A stretch of 62,950 nucleotides of DNA, filler included, from Octopus bimaculoides (taxonomy: Eukaryota), in assembly GCF_001194135.2 (NCBI RefSeq). It is 6 parts of 6 records of this genome, joined end to end, with 100 filler letters (N's around TTAATTAATTAA, not from the genome) between each part and the next. Parts side by side here need not be neighbours in the genome. Positions count along the whole stretch, not along the records: positions 19,947 to 36,102 come from NC_068981.1; 5 more parts are not named here. One strand, given 5' to 3'. The translations under genes and the position numbers were made by a program. Position 1 is the stretch's first letter. The number at the start of each line of letters is the position of its first letter. The notes beneath the pieces were generated by a model that searched no databases, had not been told where the DNA came from, and worked only from the letters and a program-made list of their open reading frames with translations. Shown here piece after piece: positions 19,307 through 36,281 of this stretch.

Positions 19307-20227
19307 CATATATGCATAAATATATATACATATATATACATATATATATGCATATATATATATATATATATATGTATAAATACATATAGGTATATTTATG
19401 CTGATGTACATACAAACATGCATACACGCATACGTGCACGCACACATGCATATGAATGTATATAAGGATGTATGTATGCATGTATCTATGTATGCACGCG
19501 CGCATGCATGTATGTATGTATTATGTATAGAGGCACACCACAGAAAATTAGAATATTAAGGAAAACATAAATTTTCAGAAAAGTTATTCTTACACACGAT
19601 GAAGGCAACAGTAATGCTTCCTTTCTGCCTGTGAACATTAAAACATTATATGTGTGTGTGTGTGTGTCTGTGTGTGTGTGTCTCTGTGTGTGTGTGTGTG
19701 TCTGTGTGTGTGTGTGTGTGTGTGTCTGTGTGTGAGTGTATACACATGTATATATATCTGTATATCTTTCGATATGTATGTTTACACATACATTCTCAAA
19801 TACATAGACACACATCCCACAAACATGCGCAAAAACGCTGATATATNNNNNNNNNNNNNNNNNNNNNNNNNNNNNNNNNNNNNNNNNNNNTTAATTAATT
19901 AANNNNNNNNNNNNNNNNNNNNNNNNNNNNNNNNNNNNNNNNNNNNGAGTTCTACTTATTTATTTATCTATTTATTTGTTATATCTTTCTCCCTTTTCTT
20001 CCTCTGTTTAGATGAACTTTCCTACCTTTTCGGACAAAACCTTTTGTAACCTTCGTCCTGTCTTTGTCCTTACATGTTTTTAATCGATATTAGCCCTTGT
20101 GGCCAATAAAACGAATTAATCATCATCATCATCATCCTCATCATCATCATCATCATCATCATCATTATTATTATTATTATTATTAATATTATTATTATTA
20201 TTATTATTGTTATTAATGATGATGACG

Positions 20228-20445
20228 ATGACGGAGAGCTGGCACAATTGTTAACACGACGAACAAAATGTGTAGTGGTATTTCGTCCGTCCCCACGTTT
20301 ACTGTTCATATTCCGCCGAGGTCGACATTGCCTTTACTTCTTTGGAGGTCGATGAATTAAATACCACTTTCGGACTGTGGTCGATCTAATCCACTGCCCA
20401 CCTCTGCAAAAATTTCGGACCTTGTGCCTAGAGTAGAAACGATTA
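20228..20445 (+). mobile_element. SINE family B
   Basis: GGAGAGCTGGCACAA...GAGGTCGACATTGCCTTTAC...CTTGTGCCTAGAGTAGAAA. Confidence 0.85.
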
Positions 20446-20469
20446 ATATTATTATTATTGCCATTGCGC

Positions 20470-20805
20470 AGCTTCTAACGCTCGAGATGTACTACGGTGT
20501 GAGCTGTTCAATACCAGTGAACTAAAGTAACACCTATTATATTTTCGAGCACCTTCCGGTGTATTTGAGCGGTTCCAAGCAGTGCTGTTTTCTGCAAGAT
20601 CTTCACCCGTATTGCATCCCCTATTTGTTCCACCTACTTCTCGAGACTTTTACTCATTGTTCCCAAGCCTTCGACAATTATTGGTACTATTGCCACCTTT
20701 TTAATCGACCACAACTGCTTAACCTTCCAAGCTAACCTGTGATATCTATCGACTTTTCTTTCTTCCTTATCGCATACCTTGTCAGCTAGGCATGCTATAT
20801 CTATG
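20470..20805 (-). mobile_element. R4/Dong-like retroelement, C-terminal restriction-like endonuclease fragment
   Basis: Minus peptide KEERKVDRYHRLAWKVKQLWSIKKVAIVPIIVEGLG...ILQKTALLGTA. Confidence 0.7.
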
Positions 20806-20816
20806 ATCTAGCATTA

Positions 20817-20910
<94 letters not shown>

Positions 20911-20911
<1 letters not shown>

Positions 20912-21085
20912 GGTGAAGCGTAGTGGTATTTCGTCTGTCCTTATGTTTGCTTTCAAATTCTGCCGAGGTCGACTTTGCCTTTCATCCTTTCGGGTTCGAT
21001 ACAATAAGTACCAGTGAAACACTGGGGTCGTTATAATCGATTAGTCCCCTCACACAAAATTTCAGGCCTTGTACTTTTATTAGAA
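20911..21085 (+). mobile_element. SINE family B, 5'-truncated
   Basis: GCCGAGGTCGACTTTGCCTTTCATCCTTTCGGG. Confidence 0.85.
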
Positions 21086-21289
21086 AGGATTATTATTGAA
21101 ACAAAACTCAGGTTTGGTTTGTTCCTAGTAGGGGTTTTTGTGTGTATCGAGTTACTATCTGAGAACCTACATTTTCTCTGCATTTGTCATCCGTTTCTGT
21201 ATTTAATATCGTTTCCATAAATTAGTTAATTTATTATTGATATTTCACTTCCCATTACGTCAATCTCTGTTTCAGTTTTACTTCTCCAG

Positions 21290-22330
21290 TTTGGATTTCT
21301 TCCCAGCTTTGTATTCGTATGCTTTTTCGGAGGCATACAACTGGTTTCAAATGTCTAAGCATGCCTAAATAATTTCGTTTAACTCAGTGGGATCAAGTTT
21401 TAGTTCTTGTACGATTTCTTCTAAACAAAGTTACCATATTTAATTTGATTTCTGTTTTGGATTATATTTGAGAGATTATGAAGTGGTAATCTCTCATGCA
21501 TATTGTCATGTCTTTCTACTGCAAGCTTATTTAGGATTTTCTGCTTCATTTCTCTCACACTCTCTATGCTCTTCAGTAAATGTGTGGTCTTCAAGTATTG
21601 TTTCTTTACCACTTTCCTCGCTATCTTTATCAGCTTCAACAATGTATTTCTTTAGACATTGCGTGTTCTGGTTTTACGTTTTATGCTAAACATACTGGGT
21701 AAAAACAAGGACAGACAAAGGGATTAAGTCGATAACATCGACCCCAGTGCGTAACTGGTACTTAATTTATCGACCCTGAAAAAATGAAAGGCCAGTCGAC
21801 CTCGGCGGAATTTGAACTCAGAACGTAACGACAGACGAAATACTGCTAAGCATTTCGCTCAGTGTGCTAACGTTTCTGCCAGATCGCCGCATTTAATTTC
21901 TAAATTGCTTTAAACAATACACTTCAATTAAATCTGGTCTTGGGCCCTTACAATTCGGCATTTTTCATAACGCTTTACTCATTAATGCACTAGTTAGTTT
22001 TAAGTCTGGTAACTTCTCAATAAATATTTCTTCCCTTATTTTCTTTAGTGGCGCTGCATCCTCATCATAAGTATCTGGTTTATCCCAAATATAACTCCAA
22101 AACGTTTTAGCTTCTGCATTAGGCTTCTCATCTCCATCACTTTCTTCTACGCTATATATTTAGTGATAGAATCTCCTCTGCTTGTCTCTGTTGATACTGA
22201 TCTATGTTTCCGATATCTGGAAATCTTACCTGTTATTGCTATGATACTCTGTTTGAGCTCTTCCATCACTATCTGAAATCCTTATATTTCGACTGAGTAT
22301 TTTTCTGAAGAGAATACTGAAATCTTGTGC
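21290..22330 (-). mobile_element. R4/Dong-like retroelement, pre-RT region, interrupted by a SINE
   Basis: Minus peptides AEAKTFWSYIWDK and APRPDLIEVYCLK (resembling APGPD..GYWLK). Confidence 0.5.
21690..21892 (-). mobile_element. SINE family B with a variant 3' end
   Basis: GTCGACCTCGGCGGAATTTGAACTCAGAACGTAA...GCTAACGTTTCTGCCAG. Confidence 0.85.
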
Positions 22331-22419
22331 CATCCCCTTCCAGATATTCCTTACATACATCACTGCCTATGTCTCCCGTTTTCGCTCCAGGGAGTAGAGC
22401 TGTAGCTCTTTCAATCCCT

Positions 22420-24290
22420 CACAGCTCAGCTGTTCCCTTGCGGCAATCTTCCTAGTGTAGCGCTGCTGAACTGCCTCATGTTCTGTTATAAATTTGACAC
22501 CGTAGGGTGACCACTATAGAGAGCAGTAGAACGGACGGCTGAGTAGAAATGTCCTCCATAGAACCAAAATAGTTTCCAGGTCCCTTGTTCTGTAGGGTCA
22601 CCATCTTGCTGATAGGTACGTGACAAGAAGCATCGTTGCTCATATCAACCCCCAGATCATGTACTATACATGACTCTGGAATTGCCACTCCTTTTGGTCC
22701 AAAGTATCACAGTTGCAGCTTCTGAGCACCAATTAACTGGTAGTGGAGGGCTTGAAATATAACTGCATTAACTTGCATGTTGTTTTCGTCAGCCCATTTA
22801 TTTATGGTATCTTGGTATTTCTCTGGACGATTAACACCAAAAGTTTCCTAGATTACTTGTATTTTTTATGTCGCCTGCTTTTGTGTTGACACTATGTCTG
22901 AAAGAGCCACTATGAACAGTGGCGGCCCTAAGCCAGTTCCTTGAAGCACTCCATTCTGTCTCATTGGACAGGGCCCCAGCTTGGCATCTGCCTTTTAAAA
23001 AGTCATATAACCACTCTCCCAGTGTCCTGACTGTGCCGAGTCTCTGTAGCTTGTATGCTATCAGTCCATGCATAATTAATCTTATCAAAGCCTTTGCAAA
23101 ATCGAGATATATCACGTCTATGTATAAGCGATTCATTGTTCCAACACCTAGTCGTAATGCTGCAAAATTTGTGTAAGATAGTTATTTCCTGAGCGGAAGT
23201 CATGCTGGGTGTCAGGGAGTAAGCCATTATCTTCAAGGAACGCTATCAGTTTCCTCTTGACAACGCGTTTCAGGATTTTGCAGAAATGGTAACTTAGGGA
23301 GACAAGTCTATGATTTTTAGCATCTGCTCTGGTACTTCCCTCATAGAAAGGCATATGTCTTCAAACTGTTTGAGGCAGCTCTGAAAGAGAATCCATAATA
23401 GTCCTGCCAGAGGCGCTTTGCATTATTTTTGGAGGATTGCTGAGAATCCATTAGATTGTGTGGATGAGTTTGCACTTACTTCATCAATGGGTAATATTGC
23501 ATGATCCCTTTATTTTGATATTATCAATAATTTCCATTTTTTTGTGTAGGGTTGTGGAACCAAAGATACTTGCAAGTTGCCCGATGAAGTTGTAAAAACA
23601 CTCGTGTAGTGCACATTCAGTATTTCCCTGATCCTCTGGGAGTCTGCGGTCGGTGAGCCTATTTATTCGAACAGTCTTTTATTGTAGTAAATCAGACTCT
23701 TTTGCATATCTTTAAAAGGTTTTAGGGTTTGTCTTGATATTCTGAAAGCCCTAGCTTCTCTTTCTGTCCTTACTTTTTCATGGGAGTGTTTGAGTTCATT
23801 TCCGATCTCCAACAAAGTTTGTTTGAAATAGAATCGTTTGCTATTTTTAGTGGCCCATTTAGACGGTTCGTGGTTTTTGCTTGTTGTGTCATTAGAATCC
23901 TCCAAACCCTCGGAATTATGTTTTTTGTTGATTTTGTATATGATTATCATAAAGAACTGCAGCTTTATGTCTATATCTTGCGTGGAGTGCCTGGTAGACA
24001 AGTTTTGTTCCGTTTCATTTTTCTCAATAATCTTCCAATCGGCTTTGTGAAAGTTCAGGTCGGAAAGAAGTTGGGTGATTCTAGTAGCCTGCATAACAGC
24101 GGTTTTCCGCTAATCATATCTTGGTAGTTCCATTAGATTATGATCAGAGAAACTCGTCAGTGTCACCTTAAGAATATGGATGAGCGCCGCGTTATTTGTG
24201 AAGCAGAAGACAAGAACAATCATTTTTCACTGTGTTGGGTGGAGCACTATTTGCTTCATGAAGAGCACGTTTGTGATGTCTAGCAGAGTA
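22420..24290 (-). mobile_element. Degenerate CR1/L2-group LINE, reverse-transcriptase region
   Basis: Minus-strand peptides IDVIYLDFAKA...LGEWLYDFLKGRCQ and KNHRLVSLSYHFCKILKRVVKRKLIAFLEDNGLLPDTQHDFRSG, with many frameshifts and stops. Confidence 0.85.
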
Positions 24291-25407
24291 TAACAGCCCC
24301 CAACGACACAGAGCCAAGTCACAAGCTATGATGCTACCAGCATGGAATTTTGTTCATGGAGCCGACAAGGCTTCGAAGAGGAAACAAACCGTGGATGAAG
24401 TGCGGACAGCAGCTACTAGGCTTTTCTTTTGTTGAAGTCGTACAGATGATTGTCAGACAGCTGACCTGGCTTTACCAAACACATTCCAGCTCTCGTATCC
24501 ACCTCAAACAAGAAATGATCAAGGGAAGGTACATCTGACACCTCTGCACATGTCAGACCAGTGATCAATACAGACTCATTATATGTTGCAGCAGTATTCT
24601 TGTCGAACATCAGGGGCATCGTAACGTCCCACCCATCAAAACCCAGTACCTTAGAGACTTAGTGATAAGTAATCTTGCAATAAGCACGGCACTAAGAGAA
24701 ACACATCTGAACGCAGACATATCAGATGCTGAGATACACTTACCAAAGTATGTTATGTTTCGAACTATCAGGAGAGAAAGGACTCATGGTGGAGTAGCAG
24801 TGCGCAAACTCAGTGTGTGACACTCTGGTGGTACACGTTACACAGTTAAAAATATTAGTATGTACAACTTATCGCCCACCAGATGCTCCAAATAATGGGG
24901 AGTTGTTTGAAGAGAGCTTCCCAAAAATGAAATAAGCATTAACCAACCTGGATGACATCCTGCACATACTTCTTCAAAAGGACTTCAACAACCCTAAATT
25001 CATATGGCCTGAGAGCCGCCTTCTCTCAGGTATGTCAATTCATGTACAAACGCAAACAGAGTCTCTGCCAGATATCACAAACATGCTCTTCATGGAGCAA
25101 ATATTGCTCCACCCAACAGAGTGAGAAAAAAATTTTCTTGTCTTCTGCTTCACAAATAACGCGGCGCTCATCCATACTCTTAAGGTGACACTGACGAGTT
25201 TCTCTGATCATAATCTAATGGAACTGCCAAGATATGGGTAGCGGAAAACCGCTGTTATGCAGGCTACTAGAATCACCCAACTTCTTTCCGACCTGAACTT
25301 TCACAAATCCGATTGGAAGAGTATTGAGAAAAATGAAACGGAACAAAACTTGTCCACCAGTCACTCCACGCAAGATATAGACATAAAGCTGCAGTTCTTT
25401 ATGATAA
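24290..25407 (+). mobile_element. Inverted 5' part of the same LINE family (apurinic-endonuclease domain)
   Basis: Plus-strand SNIRG, ETHLNADISDAEIHLPKY and RTHGGVAV endonuclease motifs. 25063-25407 is the reverse complement of 23944-24288. Confidence 0.8.
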
Positions 25408-26260
25408 ATCTTCCCGGACTAGTTATACTTAATACAAACTAACTTATTTACCTAAGTTTTAAAATTATTTCCTTCGAAATACTCACCTTGCGCAGCAATA
25501 CACCGCTACTTGCTTTCCTACTACTTTTGGAATCCGGCCTGGAAGTCTTTTTTCATTAGCGTGTCAAGGACCTTCTGTGATTCACTCTGGATGTCAACGA
25601 CAGTGTTAAAATGTCGACCTTTCAACTGCGTGTTCACCTCGGGGAAGATATTGAAGTCCACAAGTGCACAATTTGGTCTATAGGGCGGGTGCAGTAGCGA
25701 TACCATATTTGTGGCGGGAAGCTCACGAGTGATGAGAGGTCGGTGAAGAATCCAATTCTTCGTGTTCTAAAACTCTGGTCGCTTTCACGAATATCCTCCT
25801 TCAAACGCTTCAATACGTCCCTGTAGGATTATCGATTGACAGCCTATCCCTGGGAAACGAATACACGATTGACAATACCACATTTCCGAGGATGGCTCTT
25901 GTGGCAGGTCTTCCAAATCGGCCAAGTCTTCCAGGAAAACCTCTTCCGTTTTTGAAGCGACGTTGCCACTCAAAACATTGCGTACGACCCATTGCTTCGT
26001 CTCCGTAAGCATTTCGAAGAATGCTCAATGTCCTGTAGCAGACTTGGCAAGGGTAACGCTCTTCGTTCGAACTTCTAGTGCATGTCAAAAATCGCAGACT
26101 GCAACATGTTCGTGTCCGCCAAAACACAAACTTGATACCTTGCGATGTAAATAAAAGGAATTTCCCACGGCACACTCCTTCATGGAGGTTACTGCTAGCT
26201 CTCACCACATATGCACCCAGGTACTGCCATTCTGTTTGCGCGTGTCTGATACGACCTCAT
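25408..26260 (-). mobile_element. Internally deleted mariner transposon (different family)
   Basis: N-terminal AYGDEAMGRTQCFEWQRRFKNGR and C-terminal HPPYRPNCALVDFNIFPEV..QLKGRHF...DFQAGFQK. The central catalytic region is missing. Confidence 0.85.
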
Positions 26261-26580
26261 GTATATATATANNNNNNNNNNNNNNNNNNNNNNNNNNNNN
26301 NNNNNNNNNNNNNNNNNNNNNNNNNNNNNNNNNNNNNNNNNNNNNNNNNNNNNNNNNNNNNNNNNNNNNNNNNNNNNNNNNNNNNNNNNNNNNNNNNNNN
26401 NNNNNNNNNNNNNNNNNNNNNNNNNNNNNNNNNNNNNNNNNNNNNNNNNNNNNNNNNNNNNNNNNNNNNNNNNNNNNNNNNNNNNNNNNNNNNNNNNNNN
26501 NNNNNNNNNNNNNNNNNNNNNNNNNNNNNNNNNNNNNNNNNNTATATATATACAGAAATACATATATACATATATATGTA

Positions 26581-26611
<31 letters not shown>

Positions 26612-29600
26612 TGATTCGGCTCTATGCAACTTAGTGTTTCGCAATCTTCTAACAGAAATCTAGCTCTTTCTTTCGTATTTTCATATATATGTTAAGTCGA
26701 AGTAGATTAGGAGTGAAGTAATTCGTACGTATACTCTTGTCTATGTAATATATTATAACAACTAAAATTGCGATAAACACACTGATGAAGAATACCAATT
26801 TTTGTCTAATGTTTGATCGGCGTGCAGATATATTCCCTAGCAACGTGATTAGGATGGCACTCCATACAGTAGTGAGTAATATGCTTAAATTTCCTTAACG
26901 TATAGGTATTTTATGGCAATGATTGCGATGTAGGCAAATTGTAATGAAATGGGCGGACAATTTTATCGGTGTTGTAATCATAATACTGCATTGATTATTA
27001 TGTAAGTATGTCTTAAATGTCGTATTTACAATACACTTGAAGTAGAAATGCATTTCCACAAAAGACATACCCCCTTACATGGTTATACAAACGTATATGA
27101 ATCTGTACAATTATGCATGTCATTTTAACAATGCATCCACGTTAAGTACGTTATAAAGATTGAAATTCAGTATTACAATATGCACACAGAAACACACATA
27201 CACATATATATATATGTATATCCATACATATATATATATATATATANNNNNNNNNNNNNNNNNNNNNNNNNNNNNNNNNNNNNNNNNNNNNNNNNNNNNN
27301 NNNNNNNNNNNNNNNNNNNNNNNNNNNNNNNNNNNNNNNNNNNNNNNNNNNNNNNNNNNNNNNNNNNNNNNNNNNNNNNNNNNNNNNNNNNNNNNNNNNN
27401 NNNNNNNNNNNNNNNNNNNNNNNNNNNNNNNNNNNNNNNNNNNNNNNNNNNNNNNNNNNNNNNNNNNNNNNNNNNNNNNNNNNNNNNNNNNNNNNNNNNN
27501 NNNNNNNNNNNNNNNNNNNNNNNNNNNNNNNNNNNNNNNNNNNNNNNNNNNNNNNNNNNNNNNNNNNNNNNNNNNNNNNNNNNNNNNNNNNNNNNNNNNN
27601 NNNNNNNNNNNNNNNNNNNNNNNNNNNNNNNNNNNNNNNNNNNNNNNNNNNNNNNNNNNNNNNNNNNNNNNNNNNNNNNNNNNNNNNNNNNNNNNNNNNN
27701 NNNNNNNNNNNNNNNNNNNNNNNNNNNNNNNNNNNNNNNNNNNNNNNNNNNNNNNNNNNNNNNNNNNNNNNNNNNNNNNNNNNNNNNNNNNNNNNNNNNN
27801 NNNNNNNNNNNNNNNNNNNNNNNNNNNNNNNNNNNNNNNNNNNNNNNNNNNNNNNNNNNNNNNNNNNNNNNNNNNNNNNNNNNNNNNNNNNNNNNNNNNN
27901 NNNNNNNNNNNNNNNNNNNNNNNNNNATATATATATATATATATATACATATGGAGAGAAAGACAGACGGAGATTGCTAGATCGATACATTTATAGATAT
28001 CGCTAGGTATGCTTCGTTATATTCCAGTTCTATGACTCAGAATGCACACACATATACATTCATTGAAAGACTAAACATATATAGCAATCTATATATGCCA
28101 TACACATCGGAATGAAAAGAAAACAAATAGTGTGTAATTGCTAGATGGCGTAGATACTATTAATTCAAATTATTGCCAAACATAAGAGAGTTCATGTAAG
28201 AAGAAATGTTCACTAATCAATAATTTGAACTTCATCTGTGAATGATTTGGAGCGTTGCCCGAATAAATCATTGCTACTTGAGATTGACTGAATTTGTAAC
28301 TAATATTTAGTAGTAATGTGAGGGCTCGAGAGCCAGAAGAAAACGTTTAGGGAAGCAAACTGACAGTGTTACTGTATTTCCGCAAATTTCAGTTAAGCTA
28401 TTTCAACTAATGTCATTTCAATTAAAACTGTGCGTGAAAGTAATGCCATCGCATTTTGACTTCATGCCGTTCTTTAATGCTTCGATCGATCTGCAGAACA
28501 TAGCTGATAAATCTACAAATTTAGTTCTATTCTTGGAATACAAGAAATGCATTGTATAACCTTGGTTTATTCACATAATGCCTGAGAGAGGAACGGCTAA
28601 TTGTTTCATTATCAATGAAATGATAGCCCCATCAGAGGGAAGTATAAATTTCCTTGCGATATTTGTTCTCTTCAACCACTGCAGAGGATAAATTTTTTGA
28701 TCGTCGTATGGGGAAGAATAGAGTGCTAATCCAGCGCAGTATATTTAGGGGATTGTTAGACTTTTGGAGAGAATGTATCCCGATATTTGTATCGGCGCTC
28801 ATCGTTAAAATATCTTTGATCGTGTATTTTAGGTTTTAGCAGAGTTCACTCTTTTTTCTTTTAAGTCTTCGGGCCAGATCTCCGACTCCAGAATAACGTT
28901 CATCCCATTATTTGTAAGCGGGATAAAAATGTCGTCATGCTAAATAACAAAACCTGTTGGAGGACGTTGTCATGTTGTTAGTTTTTATGAATCCCCGTGT
29001 GTTTCATTAGGATTCCAGGAAGGACATTTGAGACATATTTACAGAATAATCAGAGTGTTTCTACTGATTAGAACCGATTAAAGTGTCTGCTCTTTCCAGT
29101 AATATTTGCTCAGACAGCAATCATTATTATAAAATATGCATGCGTTAATCACTTTTAAACATATTACTCAGTAGTGTAAGGAGTGGCGTCCTAATCAGAT
29201 TGCTAAAGAATATATTTACATGCTGATCAAATATCAGACAAAAACACATGTTGTTCATCAGTATATTTACCAATTTTTTTTTTGTACAGTATATTACATT
29301 GTCCGGATTATACGTACGAATTACGTCAATATTAATTAACATCTACAACCTAGAACTCAACCCCGTGTTTGCACTTTAAACGATTATTCTTGCTTAGTGT
29401 TTTGCTATATAATAATTATCAAATGCTTGTTTGTAATATTCATAAAAATGATGGGTGTATTTGCGCATGGATTTATATCTAATTGAAAAGTTTGTTGCAA
29501 TCAAGACAATTTGTCGCTGATCAAAATATCTTATATTAGATTTGATATCAGCAAAGTATTAATATTACTGACTAGCCTTAGGATAGTGCTGCAGAGAAAT

Positions 29601-29964
29601 TAAAATATTGTAATATTCAGACAATTACTATAAACCGTGCCAAATGAAGGGACACGCGACAACTACTACATTGTACAAAAAGCGATATTCTGTCAAATCG
29701 TAATTCCTACCTACTGAGATGGAAATATGTTCGTTGTCAAATTTATACAGTTACACAGTGAGAGTTGGCAACATTTTAGCAATATTATAGTTTCAGAATA
29801 TTTCAATGTATTTTCCTGTATTTCAGTGTTTAATCCTCGCTTGGAGAGGCACGTCTCTAAAATCAATTAGAGTTGATAGAAATTCATGAATACGTTAAAT
29901 GTAGAAACAACAAGCTATTAACTCTGAGTATGTCATGTGAGTCATAAAATTCCTTGTCGGTAAT

Positions 29965-30625
29965 TAACTATATAGAGAGTAGTTAGTTCTAAGATTTCTG
30001 TAGGAGATGCATGTACTACCTCTACTGAAAATTAATGTTTGTTGCCAATTCAACATGACTGTTCCGTACGGAATGTCGGTTATACTATTTTTTAAACTCT
30101 GCAAACCTTTCGAGCTGAATAACGACACAAGCTGTGTCCGATATATTGCCAGCAAAGGAGCAAACCCCTACTCTCTTTTAGCGATTTGACAGGACCAGTA
30201 GGCCAGTCTGGTTTCGTTCTGCACAGAACAGCCATGTTGGAGTGGCAACAAACGTTACTTTTTAGTATAGTTAGTACTTATATCTATTTTAGAGATTTTT
30301 AGAACCAGCTACTTTGCTTGCTGCAAGATCAGCGACTGAATGTCATTTATTTTGCTATACACTGCGAGACAGAGCAAACGACTGCCATCTGTAGCGGACA
30401 GATGTACTGTACTGAGGATGAGCACAAAATAGCCCGAAACAAGGCTTGTCTAGTGCTCCTATCAAACCGCTAGAAGATGGTAGGGCTTCGCTCCCTGCTT
30501 GTAATATATGAGACACAGGTTGTGTCGATAATCAGCTGCATATATTCTCCTGAAGTTAAAAATAGTAGTAGCTTGGTTTTGTACGGAACAGCCATGTTGA
30601 AGTGACAACAAGCATTACTTTTATA
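29965..30625. mobile_element. Hammerhead-carrying 360-bp repeat (retrozyme-like or Penelope pLTR-like): 1.1 direct monomers on + and an inverted partial copy on -
   Basis: GAACAGCCATGTTG recurs at 30226 and 30586 (period 360). The reverse complement of ~29965-30216 aligns with 30435-30625 and then with 30270-30315. Confidence 0.6.
30382..30483 (+). ncRNA. Type I hammerhead ribozyme motif with a partly decayed stem I
   Basis: CTGAGGA at 30412-30418, an extra T, stem II GAGC/GCCC, GAAAC at 30436-30440, stem III AC-AA(GGC)TT-GT and a GTC triplet at 30448-30450. It is closed by an imperfect long stem I (TAGCGG/CCGCTA and CTGCCATCT/AGATGGTAG). Confidence 0.7.
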
Positions 30626-32559
30626 TAATGAGAGTTGTGTTCATAAACATTCGATTACTTCTGTCCAGACAAGGCGCACACATGCAAGCATGCATGCAAA
30701 CTGGTGTGATTTTGTGTTCTTGTGAATGTGAATGTAAATGTGTGTCCCTTCACATATATGAGCTCCCCTTGAAATTGATTATCAACAATACACCCAACCG
30801 GACTTTAGAAGCAGTAAGTATGTGTTGACGCATACACGCTAGGACATAGCATGTTCACCAGCTGAGAGCCAACATGCAGCTGAAAATCCAAGGTAATGAA
30901 CAGCATAAGTTGCATGAACCTTTCGAGAAAATCGAAACTTACATCTAACTTAAGATACTGTTGACAAAAACGGCGATATCATCCCGCTAATCAGATGAAG
31001 ACCTGACAAAATGATCAGCCTTTTGAAGGTCTGTGGACACCGTGAGAATCATGAAAGGAATAGGAAAATCAAGAATAAGGTGGTCAACGAGTAAACTAAG
31101 CCAACGACGAGGTACAAGAGGGAAACGTGGATATTACACCATATCATGATAGATGCACTACCAGTCAGAGATTGCACTATAGAATATATAATGCTCGCAA
31201 CATGCTATGGTATCGAATGAGAACATCAAGATCCGACAAAGGGACAAATCCATGACATTGTTATAGCCATTAAAGTAAAACAAGTGAACAATACTAACAA
31301 TAAAATACAAGCGAATATGAATGGAAGATTATATATATGTGTGTATGCGTCTATGTGCTTATTTATGTGTGTGTGTTTTTATGTGCATGTGTGTGTATAC
31401 ATTTATGCTAGCCTATCACTTAGGATATCCCAGAAACAGCTGTAAGACTTCAAATTCACCGTACCCTAATTAAATATTCTAAAGACTTTGCGATACTCGT
31501 TCTGCCTTGGTTTTGTTGCGTTTCCTTTTTCTCTAATATAACGTATACCTGCTAACTTGAAATCCTAATACGGATCCCTAACGCAAGCGTCAGCTGTGAA
31601 CTCGGAACCGAACAGATGACCAATTATAGCACTTACTCAAGCGTACCTATTCATTTAGATCACCACTGAACTAAAACCCTCATATGCCCTCTCTCTTTCA
31701 CTCTCTCTCCACCTCTCCCCCTCTCTCTCTCTCTTTCTATATATATATATGTATATTATTTATATTATATATACACATGTGTGTATGTTGTGTGTGTGTA
31801 TATTATATAATTATATGCATTATATATATGTATATGNNNNNNNNNNNNNNNNNNNNNNNNNNNNNNNNNNNNNNNNNNNNNNNNNNNNNNNNNNNNNNNN
31901 NNNNNNNNNNNNNNNNNNNNNNNNNNNNNNNNNNNNNNNNNNNNNNNNNNNNNNNNNNNNNNNNNNNNNNNNNNNNNNNNNNNNNNNNNNNNNNNNNNNN
32001 NNNNNNNNNNNNNNNNNNNNNNNNNNNNNNNNNNNNNNNNNNNNNNNNNNNNNNNNNNNNNNNNNNNNNNNNNNNNNNNNNNNNNNNNNNNNNNNNNNNN
32101 NNNNNNNNNNNNNNNGAGATAAATCGATAGATATGAGTGTGTACGAGTGTACCGAATATTCGGACTAAATTTGACGATTATTGAGGTTTCCATTTTTAGA
32201 GATCACCTTAATGTATTAGTGAGCAATCAAAGGCGTTGTAGAGCATAAAAGTTAAAATTGTAGCCGAGAAAAAGTTAGCTGAGATGGAGGAAGGAAAGTC
32301 ATTAGAATATTGGAAAATATTTAACTGTATTTTGATTATTTGCGCCGAGTATCAAAACGCCATCATCATGACAGCAGCTGCATGGACAGCACACACGGTA
32401 TAAGAGGCAAAACATAATGTGGATAACTGCAAAGTGAGTAGGAGGCCCTGACCTGCAGGATGCAGTAGAGTAAGCGCTCTGAATAGGTCCGCAAACGGAA
32501 ATTCATTCCGTAACTGATTATCAATGTTTCAGGCTATGTAAAGATGCTTCAGACTGTTC

Positions 32560-32900
32560 AAACACTAGATGGTGATGGGCACTGATGGAAGGTAATATGT
32601 GTGACAGCAGTTTTCGCCTCCGAAAAGATTCACAAGTGGTTGTTCGAGAATGACTACGACTTTACCAGCTCCATTTTCTTTTCTCTTAATTCCCCCAATT
32701 GTAATCCTGTGAATTGTTCTATGTGGGGCCCAGTTGAGAAAGCAAGCTACTGATCATTCTGCAGGCGCAAGACAGAGCTGGTCGCAAAGATCAAGAAGGT
32801 GTTCGAAGATCTACACAAGGACATAGTAAGGAAAAATAGCACCAAATTCCGGAGCCGCCTTGATGCCGTGAAGGAAGCTGGGGAGAAGATTTTGAGTAGA
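32560..32900 (+). mobile_element. Tc1/mariner-superfamily (DD37D/maT-like) transposase C-terminal relic
   Basis: NSPNCNPVNCSMWGPVEK (resembling SPDCNPLDYxVWG) and LVAKIKKVFEDL.KD.V...KFRSRLDAVKEA. Confidence 0.5.
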
Positions 32901-33442
32901 AATTTGTTTTTCAACTAAAAGCTGGCATATATCTTTTGGATCTTTTCAGTTAGTTATATTTTTGTACAGAATATTGGAATATATAACAAGTTTCATTAAC
33001 ATTGAGGTAGCAGAACCACAAAACATTGCAGTGGGCTAATACTTTTGGACAAGGCTGTACACACANNNNNNNNNNNNNNNNNNNNNNNNNNNNNNNNNNN
33101 NNNNNNNNNNNNNNNNNNNNNNNNNNNNNNNNNNNNNNNNNNNNNNNNNNNNNNNNNNNNNNNNNNNNNNNNNNNNNNNNNNNNNNNNNNNNNNNNNNNN
33201 NNNNNNNNNNNNNNNNNNNNNNNNNNNNNNNNNNNNNNNNNNNNNNNNNNNNNNNNNNNNNNNNNNNNNNNNNNNNNNNNNNNNNNNNNNNNNNNNNNNN
33301 NNNNNNNNNNNNNNNNNNNNNNNNNNNNNNNNNNNNNNNNNNNNNNNNNNNNNNNNNNNNNNNNNNNNNNNNNNNNNNNNNNNNNNNNNNNNNNNNNNAC
33401 ACACACATATATATATATATGCGTGTGTGTGTGTATGTGTGT

Positions 33443-33485
<43 letters not shown>

Positions 33486-33529
33486 TATGGATATATGGAT
33501 ATGTAAGAACATACATACATATATTTATA

Positions 33530-34700
33530 TTGGGTCATCCCATAAATAATGCGATTTTTTCAGTTGCATTAACCATAGGTCTAAGGCCAATGAAATAAAC
33601 TACCTGCAGCAACTTCCTACAAAAGTAGGTAGTAATTTTACATTGTCTTTATTCTCGGTGCAAGTTCTGATGAGTGCAATTCGTTTTAATAGTTATTTTA
33701 TCAAAGCTATAATGTAAGTGACAAAGGAGTATATTCACCATATTTTGCTTTATTAGATCAAGAAAGGAAACAACCCAAGGGAAAGTGCGAAGAATATTGA
33801 TGCAGTATATGATGATCGGACAATAAGCGTAATACCCGTGTCAACGGTGTTTTCTGAAATTCCGAGCCGGAAACTGCAACCTAGGAGACGCGCCTCGACA
33901 TGGAAGGTCTGTAGAGCTTAACAAGGACGTCCTGAAAACGCTGACGTAACAAAATCCCATCGCAACTGTTGAGGGACTAGCAGAGAAGCTTGAATTTGGA
34001 CATTCGACCATTCATTGACACATGCATGCCAAGGGAAAAGTCAGCAAATTGCGTCAATGTGTTCCTCACAAACTTTCTGAGCGTAGAGTGTGGATGTGCG
34101 CTCTTCTTTGCAGTCAACTCTCGCGATTGAACCTTCTTTCGACCGAATAGCGACTGGCGACGAGAAATGGGGTCTCTATAAAAATATCAAGCGCCGAAAA
34201 CAGTGGGTAGCACCCTAGGCTAATAACGTATTCACCCACTAATGGTGATGTTATCTGTTTGGTAAGATATGTAAGGTTTTGTCCTCTTTGAACTTTTAAA
34301 CCAGAACAAACGATAGCAAAGAAGATGCACTGTGAGCGGATTCATCTGCTTACGTTAGCGACAGAATAAAAGTGACATCTTCGCTTTCAAGACGAAAGGT
34401 GTTCTTCCATCAGGATAATGCTCGGCCATATACAGCGAGGATGACATTCCAAAGGTAGGGGCAGTTTGAATTGGAAACGATGCCCCACTAACCATATCCG
34501 CCAGACATTTTACACATGTGAATATCTTTTATTCAGCAGTCTTCTATATCATTTGGACGGAAAAAAATATATATATATTCTGTAGACGAGATCAGAACAG
34601 TATTTTTTGTCACAGATAAGTGAATTTTGGAGGGGAGCCTTGCAAGTCTACTAAATAGATGGAAGAGCATTATAGAAAATGAAGGACAGGATAATTTAGA
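33530..34700 (+). mobile_element. Near full-length degenerate mariner (DD34D) transposon
   Basis: TA followed by the TIR TTGGGTCATCCCATAAATAATGCG. Transposase relics EYIHHILL, CVPHKLSE, IATGDEKW, QDNARP and PYPPDI. The 3' TIR is not seen. Confidence 0.88.
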
Positions 34701-35134
34701 TGATAAGGGCACACCAGGCACATGCACCACAACCATATGTGTGCAACATAACCTTGCAAGTGGGGCCCAGTTAGAAATTTATTCAGGTCGAGTAGCCCAT
34801 CCTGCTCAAAGGGTCTCTGAATAAGGTTTGTTTAAGGATGTTGAGCAAAACACCCATGTTTCCAAATGTGAATTATTCAAACCCCAAAGAATTCCTCTCA
34901 ACGCATGGCTATGATGCTCCCTCACTACTTCTGCTCATGATCAGAGATGCATATATCACCAGCCACCAAGGGACATTCTCAACTGGATAAGGTCAAACAG
35001 CTGACAAGCAAATCTGTTGTATTAATCTGAATATTTGCTGTAGCCCATCTTTTATACCAAGACAAAATAATGTACATGATAACACTCCCAATCAGTTCAG
35101 ATCAGAAGCTGTGCGAGCCACTGCCTGGTACAGC

Positions 35135-35215
35135 ATCTATTATTATTTTTATTATTATTATTATTATGATTAATATTATTATTATCATTGTTGTTGTTGT
35201 TGTTGCTGCTGCTGC

Positions 35216-35251
<36 letters not shown>

Positions 35252-35256
35252 CGTCG

Positions 35257-35294
<38 letters not shown>

Positions 35295-35311
35295 NNNNNN
35301 NNNNGTTGTTG

Positions 35312-35405
<94 letters not shown>
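35135..35405. repeat. Compound (ATT)n/(GTT)n/(GCT)n trinucleotide microsatellite
   Basis: Directly visible; contains a 10-N gap. Confidence 0.95.
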
Positions 35406-35408
<3 letters not shown>

Positions 35409-36007
35409 ACTGCATTAATATTATTTTCCAGCGAAATAAATCTCCGTAAATGTAGGATTATAAATTGGAAATAGTGGCAGAACAATGTAAGAAATTTTGC
35501 TGGAAATAGCAGTCGATAACCGTTCGACGCTATAGAGGCAAAAATGTGTGTATGGAGAAAGGCAAGGTTGTGTGCGAGCGACGAATGTAGAAAACTTTCG
35601 GCTTACTTCTAGGAAGGACGACAGAGAAATGGAGAACCTAGTACACGAGTTTTGAAAATTTCAGAATACGTTTGTTATCGTATCCATTCCTCTGGCGTTC
35701 TTCCTTGAGGTAAGACGAAAATGTTTTATATTCTTTATATTTATTTTTTTTTTATATTAATATTTTTATATAAAGCTTTTTCACTGATGTCGGTTCTGTT
35801 TATGGCTCGACACTCGAGTACTAGGTAGTCCATTTGTGTGGCAGTCTAAATATAGGTACGACAATTTTTTTAAATTATATATTCACTGCCCGCACACATC
35901 TTTGCCTCTATATATATTAAGTGAAGCTTTACTTAGCTTCGAACGGTATCGAATACTATTTCCAGCCAACACTGGTACCTTGCTGTTCGGCTATTTCCTG
36001 TACATAC

Positions 36008-36059
<52 letters not shown>

Positions 36060-36065
36060 GTGTGC

Positions 36066-36099
<34 letters not shown>

Positions 36100-36281
36100 A
36101 TGNNNNNNNNNNNNNNNNNNNNNNNNNNNNNNNNNNNNNNNNNNNNTTAATTAATTAANNNNNNNNNNNNNNNNNNNNNNNNNNNNNNNNNNNNNNNNNN
36201 NNTGGTATGCTTTCTTTATTTATATAAGCTAGAAGCAAAATGGTACAAAAAAAAAACAAAATTACGGCATACATCCATAAG

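What the first reader, a model, noticed from the sequence alone, without database searches (positions are those of the whole stretch)
30382..30483. Type I hammerhead ribozyme with an intact catalytic core in otherwise anonymous sequence
Seen: CTGAGGA (30412-18), T, stem II GAGC-acaaaata-GCCC, GAAAC (30436-40), stem III AC-AA(GGC)TT-GT and GTC (predicted cut after 30450). A long imperfect closing stem I follows: TA/TA, GTAC/GTGC, GAT/ATC, TAGCGG/CCGCTA and CTGCCATCT/AGATGGTAG. Established: CUGANGA...GAAA...NUH in this order defines a type I hammerhead, and an extra nucleotide after A9 occurs in some natural hammerheads. Inference: this is a real ribozyme motif, but the core-proximal stem I carries a 2-nt bulge and stem II one mismatch, so this copy may cleave poorly while the family consensus is active.
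Basis: partly seen in the sequence, partly recalled or inferred. Interest (0 to 1): 0.85.

Follow-up and report, generated by a model that had tools for sequence, protein, structure and literature searches.

The report
Decayed hammerhead ribozyme in a repeat
The motif is really there, but it is most likely a worn-out copy of an ordinary animal type I hammerhead ribozyme carried by a ~360-base non-coding repeat, and this copy probably no longer cuts itself.

Summary
The bare core pattern is not rare: it turned up in 22 of 100 shuffles. The full core-plus-three-helices arrangement is rare, at about 2.4e-4 per 16-kb piece, even with a descriptor loosened to accept it. It is not in anonymous sequence. 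It lies in a ~360-nt non-coding repeat with three partial local copies: a 1.17-unit direct copy and an inverted copy.

No Rfam hammerhead model reaches its threshold. The only match is HH9, at 16.2 bits against a threshold of 52. In it the architecture is canonical:
- a 6-bp stem I, GUACUG/UAGUGC;
- an internal loop UACU/UCC;
- loop 2 AAAAUA.

In that register C3U4 read AG and stem II has two mismatches. In both registers the hammerhead fold is 15–18 kcal/mol worse than a competing hairpin, against 1–8 kcal/mol for five real hammerheads.

Best reading: a decayed type I hammerhead of a retrozyme-like repeat, whose "intact core" is probably a shifted pseudo-core. No family copies could be retrieved, so the family consensus is untested. 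This is a known kind of element and of low interest.

The parts
30209..30628 (+). Copy A of a ~360-nt non-coding repeat, 1.17 units long. Its two ends repeat each other (30213-30262 vs 30573-30622, 84% identical). It contains the hammerhead-like motif.
   Evidence: the repeat finder family D3 with spacing 360; blastn; nhmmer with the 360-nt unit
29976..30216 (-). Copy B of the same repeat, inverted and partial, about 75% identical to copy A. It covers the 3' part of the motif (CGAAAC, stem III, 3' strand of stem I) plus about 220 nt downstream. It reads GCC where copy A has GUC.
   Evidence: blastn 30435-30622 vs 30216-30028 at 75% and 30217-30313 vs 30073-29978 at 76%; alignment A1; nhmmer
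30382..30483 (+).
   Evidence: MFE -40.8 kcal/mol, z = -3.8; pairings checked base by base
30412..30418 (+). It is probably a pseudo-core made of the last three bases of stem I (CUG) plus AGGA.
   Evidence: register comparison with the HH9 alignment
30415..30421 (+). AGGAUGA, the position of C3-A9 in the register chosen by the covariance model. C3U4 are replaced by AG.
   Evidence: gapless HH9 alignment, model positions 1-77 and 13-61
30409..30414 (+). GUACUG, the 5' strand of a 6-bp proximal stem I in the shifted register. It pairs with UAGUGC at 30451-30456.
   Evidence: Rfam structure line; constrained fold
30422..30435 (+). Stem II and loop 2. In the shifted register it reads GCAC-AAAAUA-GCCC, with two internal mismatches.
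30436..30450 (+). GAAA, then stem III (ACAA/UUGU with loop GGC), then C17. The predicted cleavage site is after 30450.
30451..30463 (+). 3' strand of stem I (UAGUGC), internal loop UCCU, and distal AUC
   Evidence: UCCU is conserved in copy B
30573..30622 (+). The best-conserved block of the repeat. It also occurs at 30213-30262 and, reverse-complemented, at 30028-30077. It can form two small hairpins.

Best explanation
This is a degenerate genomic copy of a canonical animal type I hammerhead ribozyme. It is carried by a ~360-nt non-coding, low-GC repeat of the non-LTR retrozyme kind.

In such elements a multimeric transcript cuts itself once per unit. The resulting monomers are circularised and copied back into the genome. 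Most genomic copies then decay neutrally.

There:
- stem I is GUACUG/UAGUGC (6 bp);
- above it lies the internal loop GUACU/UCCU and the distal pairs GAU/AUC;
- loop 2 is AAAAUA;
- G12-A14 (GAA), a 4-bp stem III and GUC follow.

In this copy C3U4 have become AG and stem II has lost two pairs.

Whichever register is taken, this copy is predicted to fold into a competing hairpin and to be inactive or nearly so.

Shown: the sequence, the repeat structure, the model alignment and the energetics. Inferred: hammerhead ancestry, retrozyme identity and loss of activity.
For: 1. The composite motif is rare by chance at the scale of the piece: 0/3000 simulated pieces and 4 hits in 495 Mb.

2. The Rfam HH9 model aligns end to end, 77/77 positions, with no gap. 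Every helix and loop has the canonical length. The same register is chosen when only 55 nt are offered.

3. In that register the site shares 29/44 positions with the Schistosoma mansoni hammerhead enzyme strand. Outside the core these include GAUGUACU (8/8) and AAAUAG (6/6). The S. mansoni sequence was rebuilt from the primers in PMC3245953.

4. The context fits what PMC7229834 describes for type I hammerhead repeats in animals, namely 150-450 bp tandem units, GC below 50% and no coding capacity:
- unit of 360 nt at 41% GC;
- a 1.17-unit tandem copy plus an inverted copy;
- no ORF with a Pfam match within about 2.5 kb.

5. The local copies differ by 16-25%. Four substitutions in a 50-nt ribozyme is therefore what neutral decay predicts.

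6. Copy B keeps CGAAAC. At stem III pair 15.3/16.3 it has C-G where copy A has A-U.

7. The hammerhead fold is 14.8-17.9 kcal/mol above the ensemble. For coral, mussel and two axolotl ribozymes and the HH9 consensus the figure is 0.9-7.6.
Against: - No Rfam hammerhead model comes near its threshold: 16.2 bits against 52. Across the whole piece and all families the E-value would be about 12.
- Plain sequence similarity to the S. mansoni ribozyme is not significant in a search of the piece: score 25 against a null of 21.5 +/- 2.2 with a maximum of 35.
- Only one copy carries the 5' half of the motif, so neither conservation nor covariation of the core could be tested.
- The choice between the two registers rests on architecture, not on family data.
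- The tandem arrangement is only 1.17 units.
- The circular fold of the unit is only modestly more stable than shuffles (z = -1.9, 59% paired).
- The compensatory change in copy B lies where copy B overlaps the start of copy A.
Confidence: 0.5

Rival explanations
1. This is a genuine type I hammerhead in the register CUGAGGA-U-GAGC..GCCC-GAAA-ACAA..UUGU-C. It has an extra U after A9, an A.C pair at 10.2/11.2 and a bulged stem I. It cleaves weakly, perhaps co-transcriptionally, after 30450.
For: - All 11 core nucleotides plus G10.1-C11.1 and A15.1-U16.1 are present in order.
- CUGAGGA with N7 = G occurs in a validated axolotl retrozyme hammerhead.
- An extra nucleotide after A9 is documented in a viroid hammerhead (De la Pena & Flores 2001, listed as ref. 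28 of PMC6155905).
- The loosened descriptor is rare by chance in a piece of this size.
Against: - No covariance model supports this register; the generic hammerhead models score below 10.8 bits even on the 55-nt motif alone.
- The site fails a strict descriptor.
- Stem I has only 2 bp before a 2-nt bulge, so the canonical loop 1/loop 2 geometry is lost.
- The constrained fold has about 0 kcal/mol in 69 nt, against -17.8 for the competitor. The gap of 17.7-17.9 kcal/mol is far outside the 0.9-7.6 seen in active controls.
Confidence: 0.15
2. The resemblance is chance. The 102-nt hairpin belongs to some unrelated short repeat (a SINE, MITE or satellite fragment) and merely contains GAUGAG, CGAAAC and GUC at hammerhead-like spacing. 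There is no ribozyme ancestry.
For: - The bare core occurs in 22% of shuffles.
- The loosened descriptor would give about 40 chance hits in a genome of a few Gb, and the first stage picked this site because it looked like a hammerhead.
- Rfam scores are far below threshold.
- Similarity to the S. mansoni ribozyme is not significant.
- The best-conserved part of the repeat is elsewhere, at 30573-30622.
- The predicted fold is not a hammerhead.
Against: - The alignment to HH9 is gapless over 77 positions, with canonical helix and loop lengths.
- The known tertiary-contact strings (UGUAC in loop 1, AAAUA in loop 2) sit at the right offsets.
- The host element has the size, GC content, non-coding nature and partial tandem form of known hammerhead repeats.
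Confidence: 0.28
3. It is the hammerhead of a Penelope-like element terminal repeat (pLTR), not of a retrozyme.
For: - Penelope-like elements carry type I hammerheads and coexist with retrozymes in invertebrates.
- A 2026 preprint argues that animal retrozymes derive from pLTRs.
Against: - Penelope-like element hammerheads are usually minimal, lacking helix III and the loop contacts. This motif has a 4-bp helix III and canonical loops.
- No reverse transcriptase or GIY-YIG frame lies next to it. The only RT remnant is LINE-like and about 7 kb away on the other strand.
Confidence: 0.05

Closest known systems
Metazoan non-LTR retrozymes (Cervera & de la Pena 2020, PMC7229834), e.g. the Mytilus galloprovincialis 350-390 bp repeats
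   Same: - Short non-coding repeat unit (360 nt), low GC (41%), at least partly tandem.
- One type I hammerhead-like motif per unit, with helix III and loop 1/loop 2 architecture.
- A conserved central block about 120-170 nt from the cleavage site, as noted for coral retrozymes.
   Different: - Only 1.17 units plus an inverted fragment, not a long array.
- The ribozyme is defective in either register.
- No sequence similarity to the coral, mussel or axolotl units in the paper's supplement was noticed on reading them (not formally aligned).
- Expression and circularity are unknown.
Schistosoma mansoni Sm-alpha hammerhead (enzyme strand GGAUGUACUACCAGCUGAUGAGUCCCAAAUAGGACGAAACGCC, rebuilt from primers in PMC3245953)
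   Same: - Same layout in the +3 register: distal GAU, loop GUAC, 6-bp stem I, GAUGAG, 4-bp stem II, loop ..AAAUA.., CGAAAC.
- 29/44 identical positions.
   Different: - C3U4 read AG; stem II has two mismatches; one extra nucleotide in the 5' strand.
- The overall similarity is not statistically significant.
- The matching substrate-strand loop (UCCA in S. mansoni against UCCU here) is recalled from memory only.
Rfam RF02275 Hammerhead_HH9 (amniote intronic hammerhead)
   Same: Gapless structural alignment over all 77 model positions.
   Different: - 16.2 bits against a gathering score of 52.
- Core mismatch at C3U4 and two non-pairs in stem II.
- HH9 is a conserved single-copy intronic element of amniotes, not a repeat.
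Penelope-like element pLTR hammerheads
   Same: Type I topology; association with retroelements in invertebrate genomes.
   Different: Those are minimal, with no helix III and no loop contacts, and they flank an RT/GIY-YIG ORF. Neither holds here.

Membership tests
Hammerhead ribozyme, type I | Core CUGANGA ... GAAA ... NUH in this order, with stem I open | tested here: met
The bare pattern occurs in 22/100 shuffles. In the register preferred by the covariance model the core reads AGGAUGA, which does not meet the feature.
Hammerhead ribozyme, type I | Three regular helices closing the core (G10.1-C11.1, A15.1-U16.1, continuous stem I) | tested here: inconclusive
   A strict descriptor rejects the site. 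A descriptor allowing one inserted nt, one stem II mismatch and a 2-nt stem I bulge accepts it. In the +3 register stems I and III are regular, but stem II has 2 mismatches out of 4 pairs.
Hammerhead ribozyme, type I | Covariance-model score at or above the Rfam gathering threshold | tested here: not met
   0 gathering hits in 19947-36102. The best clan member is HH9 at 16.2 bits against 52, and 10.8 bits on the 55-nt core.
Hammerhead ribozyme, type I | The hammerhead fold is energetically accessible | tested here: not met
   The constrained ensemble is 14.8-17.9 kcal/mol above the free ensemble, against 0.9-7.6 for five reference hammerheads. Nearest-neighbour energies ignore tertiary contacts.
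Hammerhead ribozyme, type I | Core conservation and stem covariation across family copies | not testable with these tools
   No further copies were found in the piece, in metagenome, prokaryotic genome or viral collections, or through translated ORFs. No eukaryotic genome collection is on hand.
Hammerhead ribozyme, type I | Mg2+-dependent self-cleavage 3' of C17 | not testable with these tools
   Needs an experiment.
Metazoan non-LTR retrozyme | 150-450 bp unit in tandem copies, GC below 50% | tested here: inconclusive
   The unit is 360 nt at 41% GC. However, there are only 1.17 tandem units plus one inverted partial copy.
Metazoan non-LTR retrozyme | Non-coding; no LTR, PBS or PPT | tested here: met
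   ORFs in the element are at most 66 aa. No Pfam match at E<=0.01 in 28000-32600 (one spurious Tn7_TnsC_Int match at E=0.093, below its cut-off). No terminal repeats carry the ribozyme. PBS and PPT were not searched for specifically.
Metazoan non-LTR retrozyme | The monomer folds as a stable, highly self-paired circle | tested here: inconclusive
   Circular MFE -95.3 kcal/mol, 59% paired, z = -1.9, with 7/200 shuffles as stable.
Metazoan non-LTR retrozyme | Expressed as linear and circular RNA of unit length | not testable with these tools
   No transcriptome data are available, and the source organism is not identified.
Penelope-like element pLTR | Minimal hammerhead without helix III, flanking an RT + GIY-YIG ORF | tested here: not met
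   A 4-bp helix III is present. No such ORF occurs in the piece.

The most novel reading that the evidence does not exclude
In that case this is a natural type I hammerhead that tolerates a U inserted after A9, an A.C pair next to G10.1-C11.1 and a bulge 2 bp from the core. It would mark a new retrozyme family in an unidentified invertebrate.
Probability: 0.1. Interest if true: 0.3.

Novelty: new member of a known kind. Interest (0 to 1): 0.15.

Why it matters
It matters little. Type I hammerheads in short repeats are known in thousands of copies per genome in corals, mussels, flatworms and amphibians, and 235 Hammerhead_1 loci were reported in a cephalopod genome. One decayed copy adds nothing conceptually.

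Its practical value is as a caution. Overlapping registers (CUG-AG-GAUGAG) can make a dead relic look as if it had an intact core. A motif call therefore needs a check of helices, of competing folds and of the family consensus.

If the family consensus proved active, the unit would be one more species-specific retrozyme.

Tried and rejected
- Rfam at gathering thresholds on the whole piece: nothing.
- Family copies elsewhere, all without result:
  - the pattern of the best-conserved block in metagenome, prokaryotic genome and viral contigs;
  - a generic Schistosoma-like hammerhead pattern in metagenomes, which gave one contig (L001) with a non-pairing, non-Rfam motif that is irrelevant;
  - translated ORFs of the repeat in the protein collection and in the contig index.
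- Identifying the organism through a LINE RT fragment or a window ORF: no hits.
- A tRNA-derived SINE origin: no tRNA-like gene.
- Building my own type I covariance model from validated hammerheads: MAFFT misaligned the 3' halves, so it was dropped.
- Plain local alignment to the S. mansoni and HH9 sequences: not significant.
- The Schistosoma substrate strand could not be confirmed in the held literature.
- Tandem Repeats Finder does not report the 360-nt unit, because only 1.17 units are present.

Full report
**Observation.**
- CTGAGGA at 30412-18, then T at 30419.
- GAGC/GCCC around ACAAAATA at 30420-35, with one A.C mismatch.
- GAAAC at 30436-40.
- ACAA/TTGT around GGC at 30439-49, and C at 30450.
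- Five stem I segments reaching out to 30382/30483.

The 102-nt region is a strong hairpin (MFE -40.8 kcal/mol, z = -3.8).

**Chance.** The bare core pattern is common: it occurs in 22 of 100 shuffles. I wrote a descriptor for core plus three helices and loosened it just enough to accept this site.
- It found no match in 3000 simulated pieces.
- It found 4 matches in 495 Mb of simulated single strand. That is about 2.4e-4 per piece, but tens of chance hits in a genome of a few Gb.
- A strict descriptor rejects the site.

**Context.** The piece is a draft eukaryotic, probably animal, assembly. It has N gaps, microsatellites and decayed LINE and mariner fragments. I could not identify the organism.

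The motif is not in anonymous sequence. It lies in a ~360-nt repeat.
- Copy A (30209-30628, + strand) is 1.17 units long. Its ends repeat each other at 84% identity.
- Copy B (30216-29976, - strand) is an inverted partial copy at about 75% identity.
- The unit has 41% GC and no coding capacity.
- Its best-conserved part is a ~45-nt block about 120-170 nt downstream of the putative cleavage site, not the hammerhead.
- Folded as a circle it is only modestly more stable than shuffles (z = -1.9).

These features resemble the 150-450 bp low-GC non-coding tandem repeats that carry type I hammerheads in animals, the non-LTR retrozymes (PMC7229834).

**Covariance models.** No Rfam family reaches its gathering score in the piece. 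A permissive search around the site gives only Hammerhead_HH9, at 16.2 bits against a threshold of 52. It gives 10.8 bits when only 55 nt are offered, and no other hammerhead model does better.

- stem I is GUACUG (30409-14) with UAGUGC (30451-56), 6 bp;
- the internal loop is UACU/UCC;
- a distal helix follows;
- the core strand is AGGAUGA, so C3U4 read AG;
- stem II is GCAC/GCCC, with two non-pairs;
- loop 2 is AAAAUA;
- GAA (G12-A14), stem III and GUC follow.

In this register the site shares 29/44 positions with the Schistosoma mansoni hammerhead enzyme strand, including GAUGUACU and AAAUAG outside the core. I rebuilt that strand from the primers in PMC3245953. This similarity is not significant as a blind search of the piece.

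The two registers coexist because the sequence reads GUACU-GUACU-G-AG-GAUGAG. The CUG of stem I plus AGGA spells CUGAGGA.

**Energetics.** With only the three core-closing pairs enforced and the core kept unpaired, the hammerhead ensemble lies far above the free ensemble:
- 14.8-16.4 kcal/mol in the shifted register.

The competitor pairs GAGCAC (30420-25) with GUGCUC (30453-58) and AGCC with GGCU, which buries GAAA. The same calculation on four experimentally cleaving retrozyme hammerheads (coral, mussel and two axolotl, sequences from the supplement of PMC7229834) and the HH9 consensus gives 0.9-7.6 kcal/mol. Nearest-neighbour energies ignore tertiary contacts, but the gap is large.

**Copy B.** It carries only the 3' part of the motif. 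It keeps CGAAAC and the UCCU loop, and has GCC where copy A has GUC. At stem III pair 15.3/16.3 it has C-G where copy A has A-U, one compensatory change. That stretch overlaps the start of copy A, so the evidence is weak.

**Interpretation.** The most economical reading is a neutrally decayed copy of a canonical type I hammerhead belonging to a retrozyme-like repeat.
- The local copies differ by 16-25%. Four substitutions in a 50-nt ribozyme (two in C3U4, two in stem II) are therefore expected.
- From established mutagenesis of the hammerhead core (my own knowledge), changes at C3 or U4 lower cleavage by orders of magnitude.
The inserted U has a precedent in a viroid hammerhead (De la Pena & Flores 2001, cited in PMC6155905). 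No model prefers this register.

No other copy with the 5' half of the motif could be obtained.

A Penelope-like element origin is unlikely. Those hammerheads lack helix III, and no RT/GIY-YIG frame is nearby.

**Verdict.** The kind of element is well known, so interest is low.

Noticed in passing
window 23944-24288 and 25063-25407: A 345-nt inverted repeat, 94.5% identical, encloses about 775 bp that contain a LINE-endonuclease-like reading frame (24539-24817, +). It may be a young foldback or a TIR-like structure.
   Followed up: no
window 22834-23360 (-): Frameshifted remnant of a LINE-type reverse transcriptase (..YLDFAKA.. motif). Pfam RVT_1 matches only at E = 0.026, and there are no hits in the protein collection.
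   Followed up: partly
window 25524-26256 (-): Decayed Mos1/mariner-like transposase remnant (HTH_48, E = 2.7e-4, plus a ..HPPY..-type C-terminal frame).
   Followed up: partly
window 30213-30262, 30573-30622, 30028-30077 (rc): The best-conserved block of the 360-nt repeat. It can form two small hairpins, and the first shows one compensatory change among the three copies. It may be the element's functional centre, for example a recognition site for a reverse transcriptase.
   Followed up: partly
window 30200-30216: Head-to-head junction of copy B (-) and copy A (+). About 10 nt (30206-30216) match both copies, which suggests a microhomology junction or chance. Copy B is cut off inside its hammerhead remnant here.
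   Followed up: partly
window 26706-27021 vs 29023-29336; 20161-20450 vs 20822-21097 vs 21727-21889: Two further old repeat families, 72-81% identical and of unknown type.
   Followed up: no
window 26272-26542, 27247-27926, 31837-32115, 33066-33398, 35295-35304; 35138-35407; 36011-36099: Five N gaps, each flanked by AT/TA/TG or TAT microsatellites; a ~90-copy (TAT)n; a 44-copy (TG)n at the end of the piece. This is typical of a short-read draft assembly of an animal genome.
   Followed up: no
L001 7048-7091 (-), metagenome contig Ga0157364_1005428: CACTGATGAGCTTCAAATAATGCGAAAC: a hammerhead-like string in an AT-rich, apparently eukaryotic metagenome contig. It lacks a proper stem II/III and has no Rfam hit.
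   Followed up: partly
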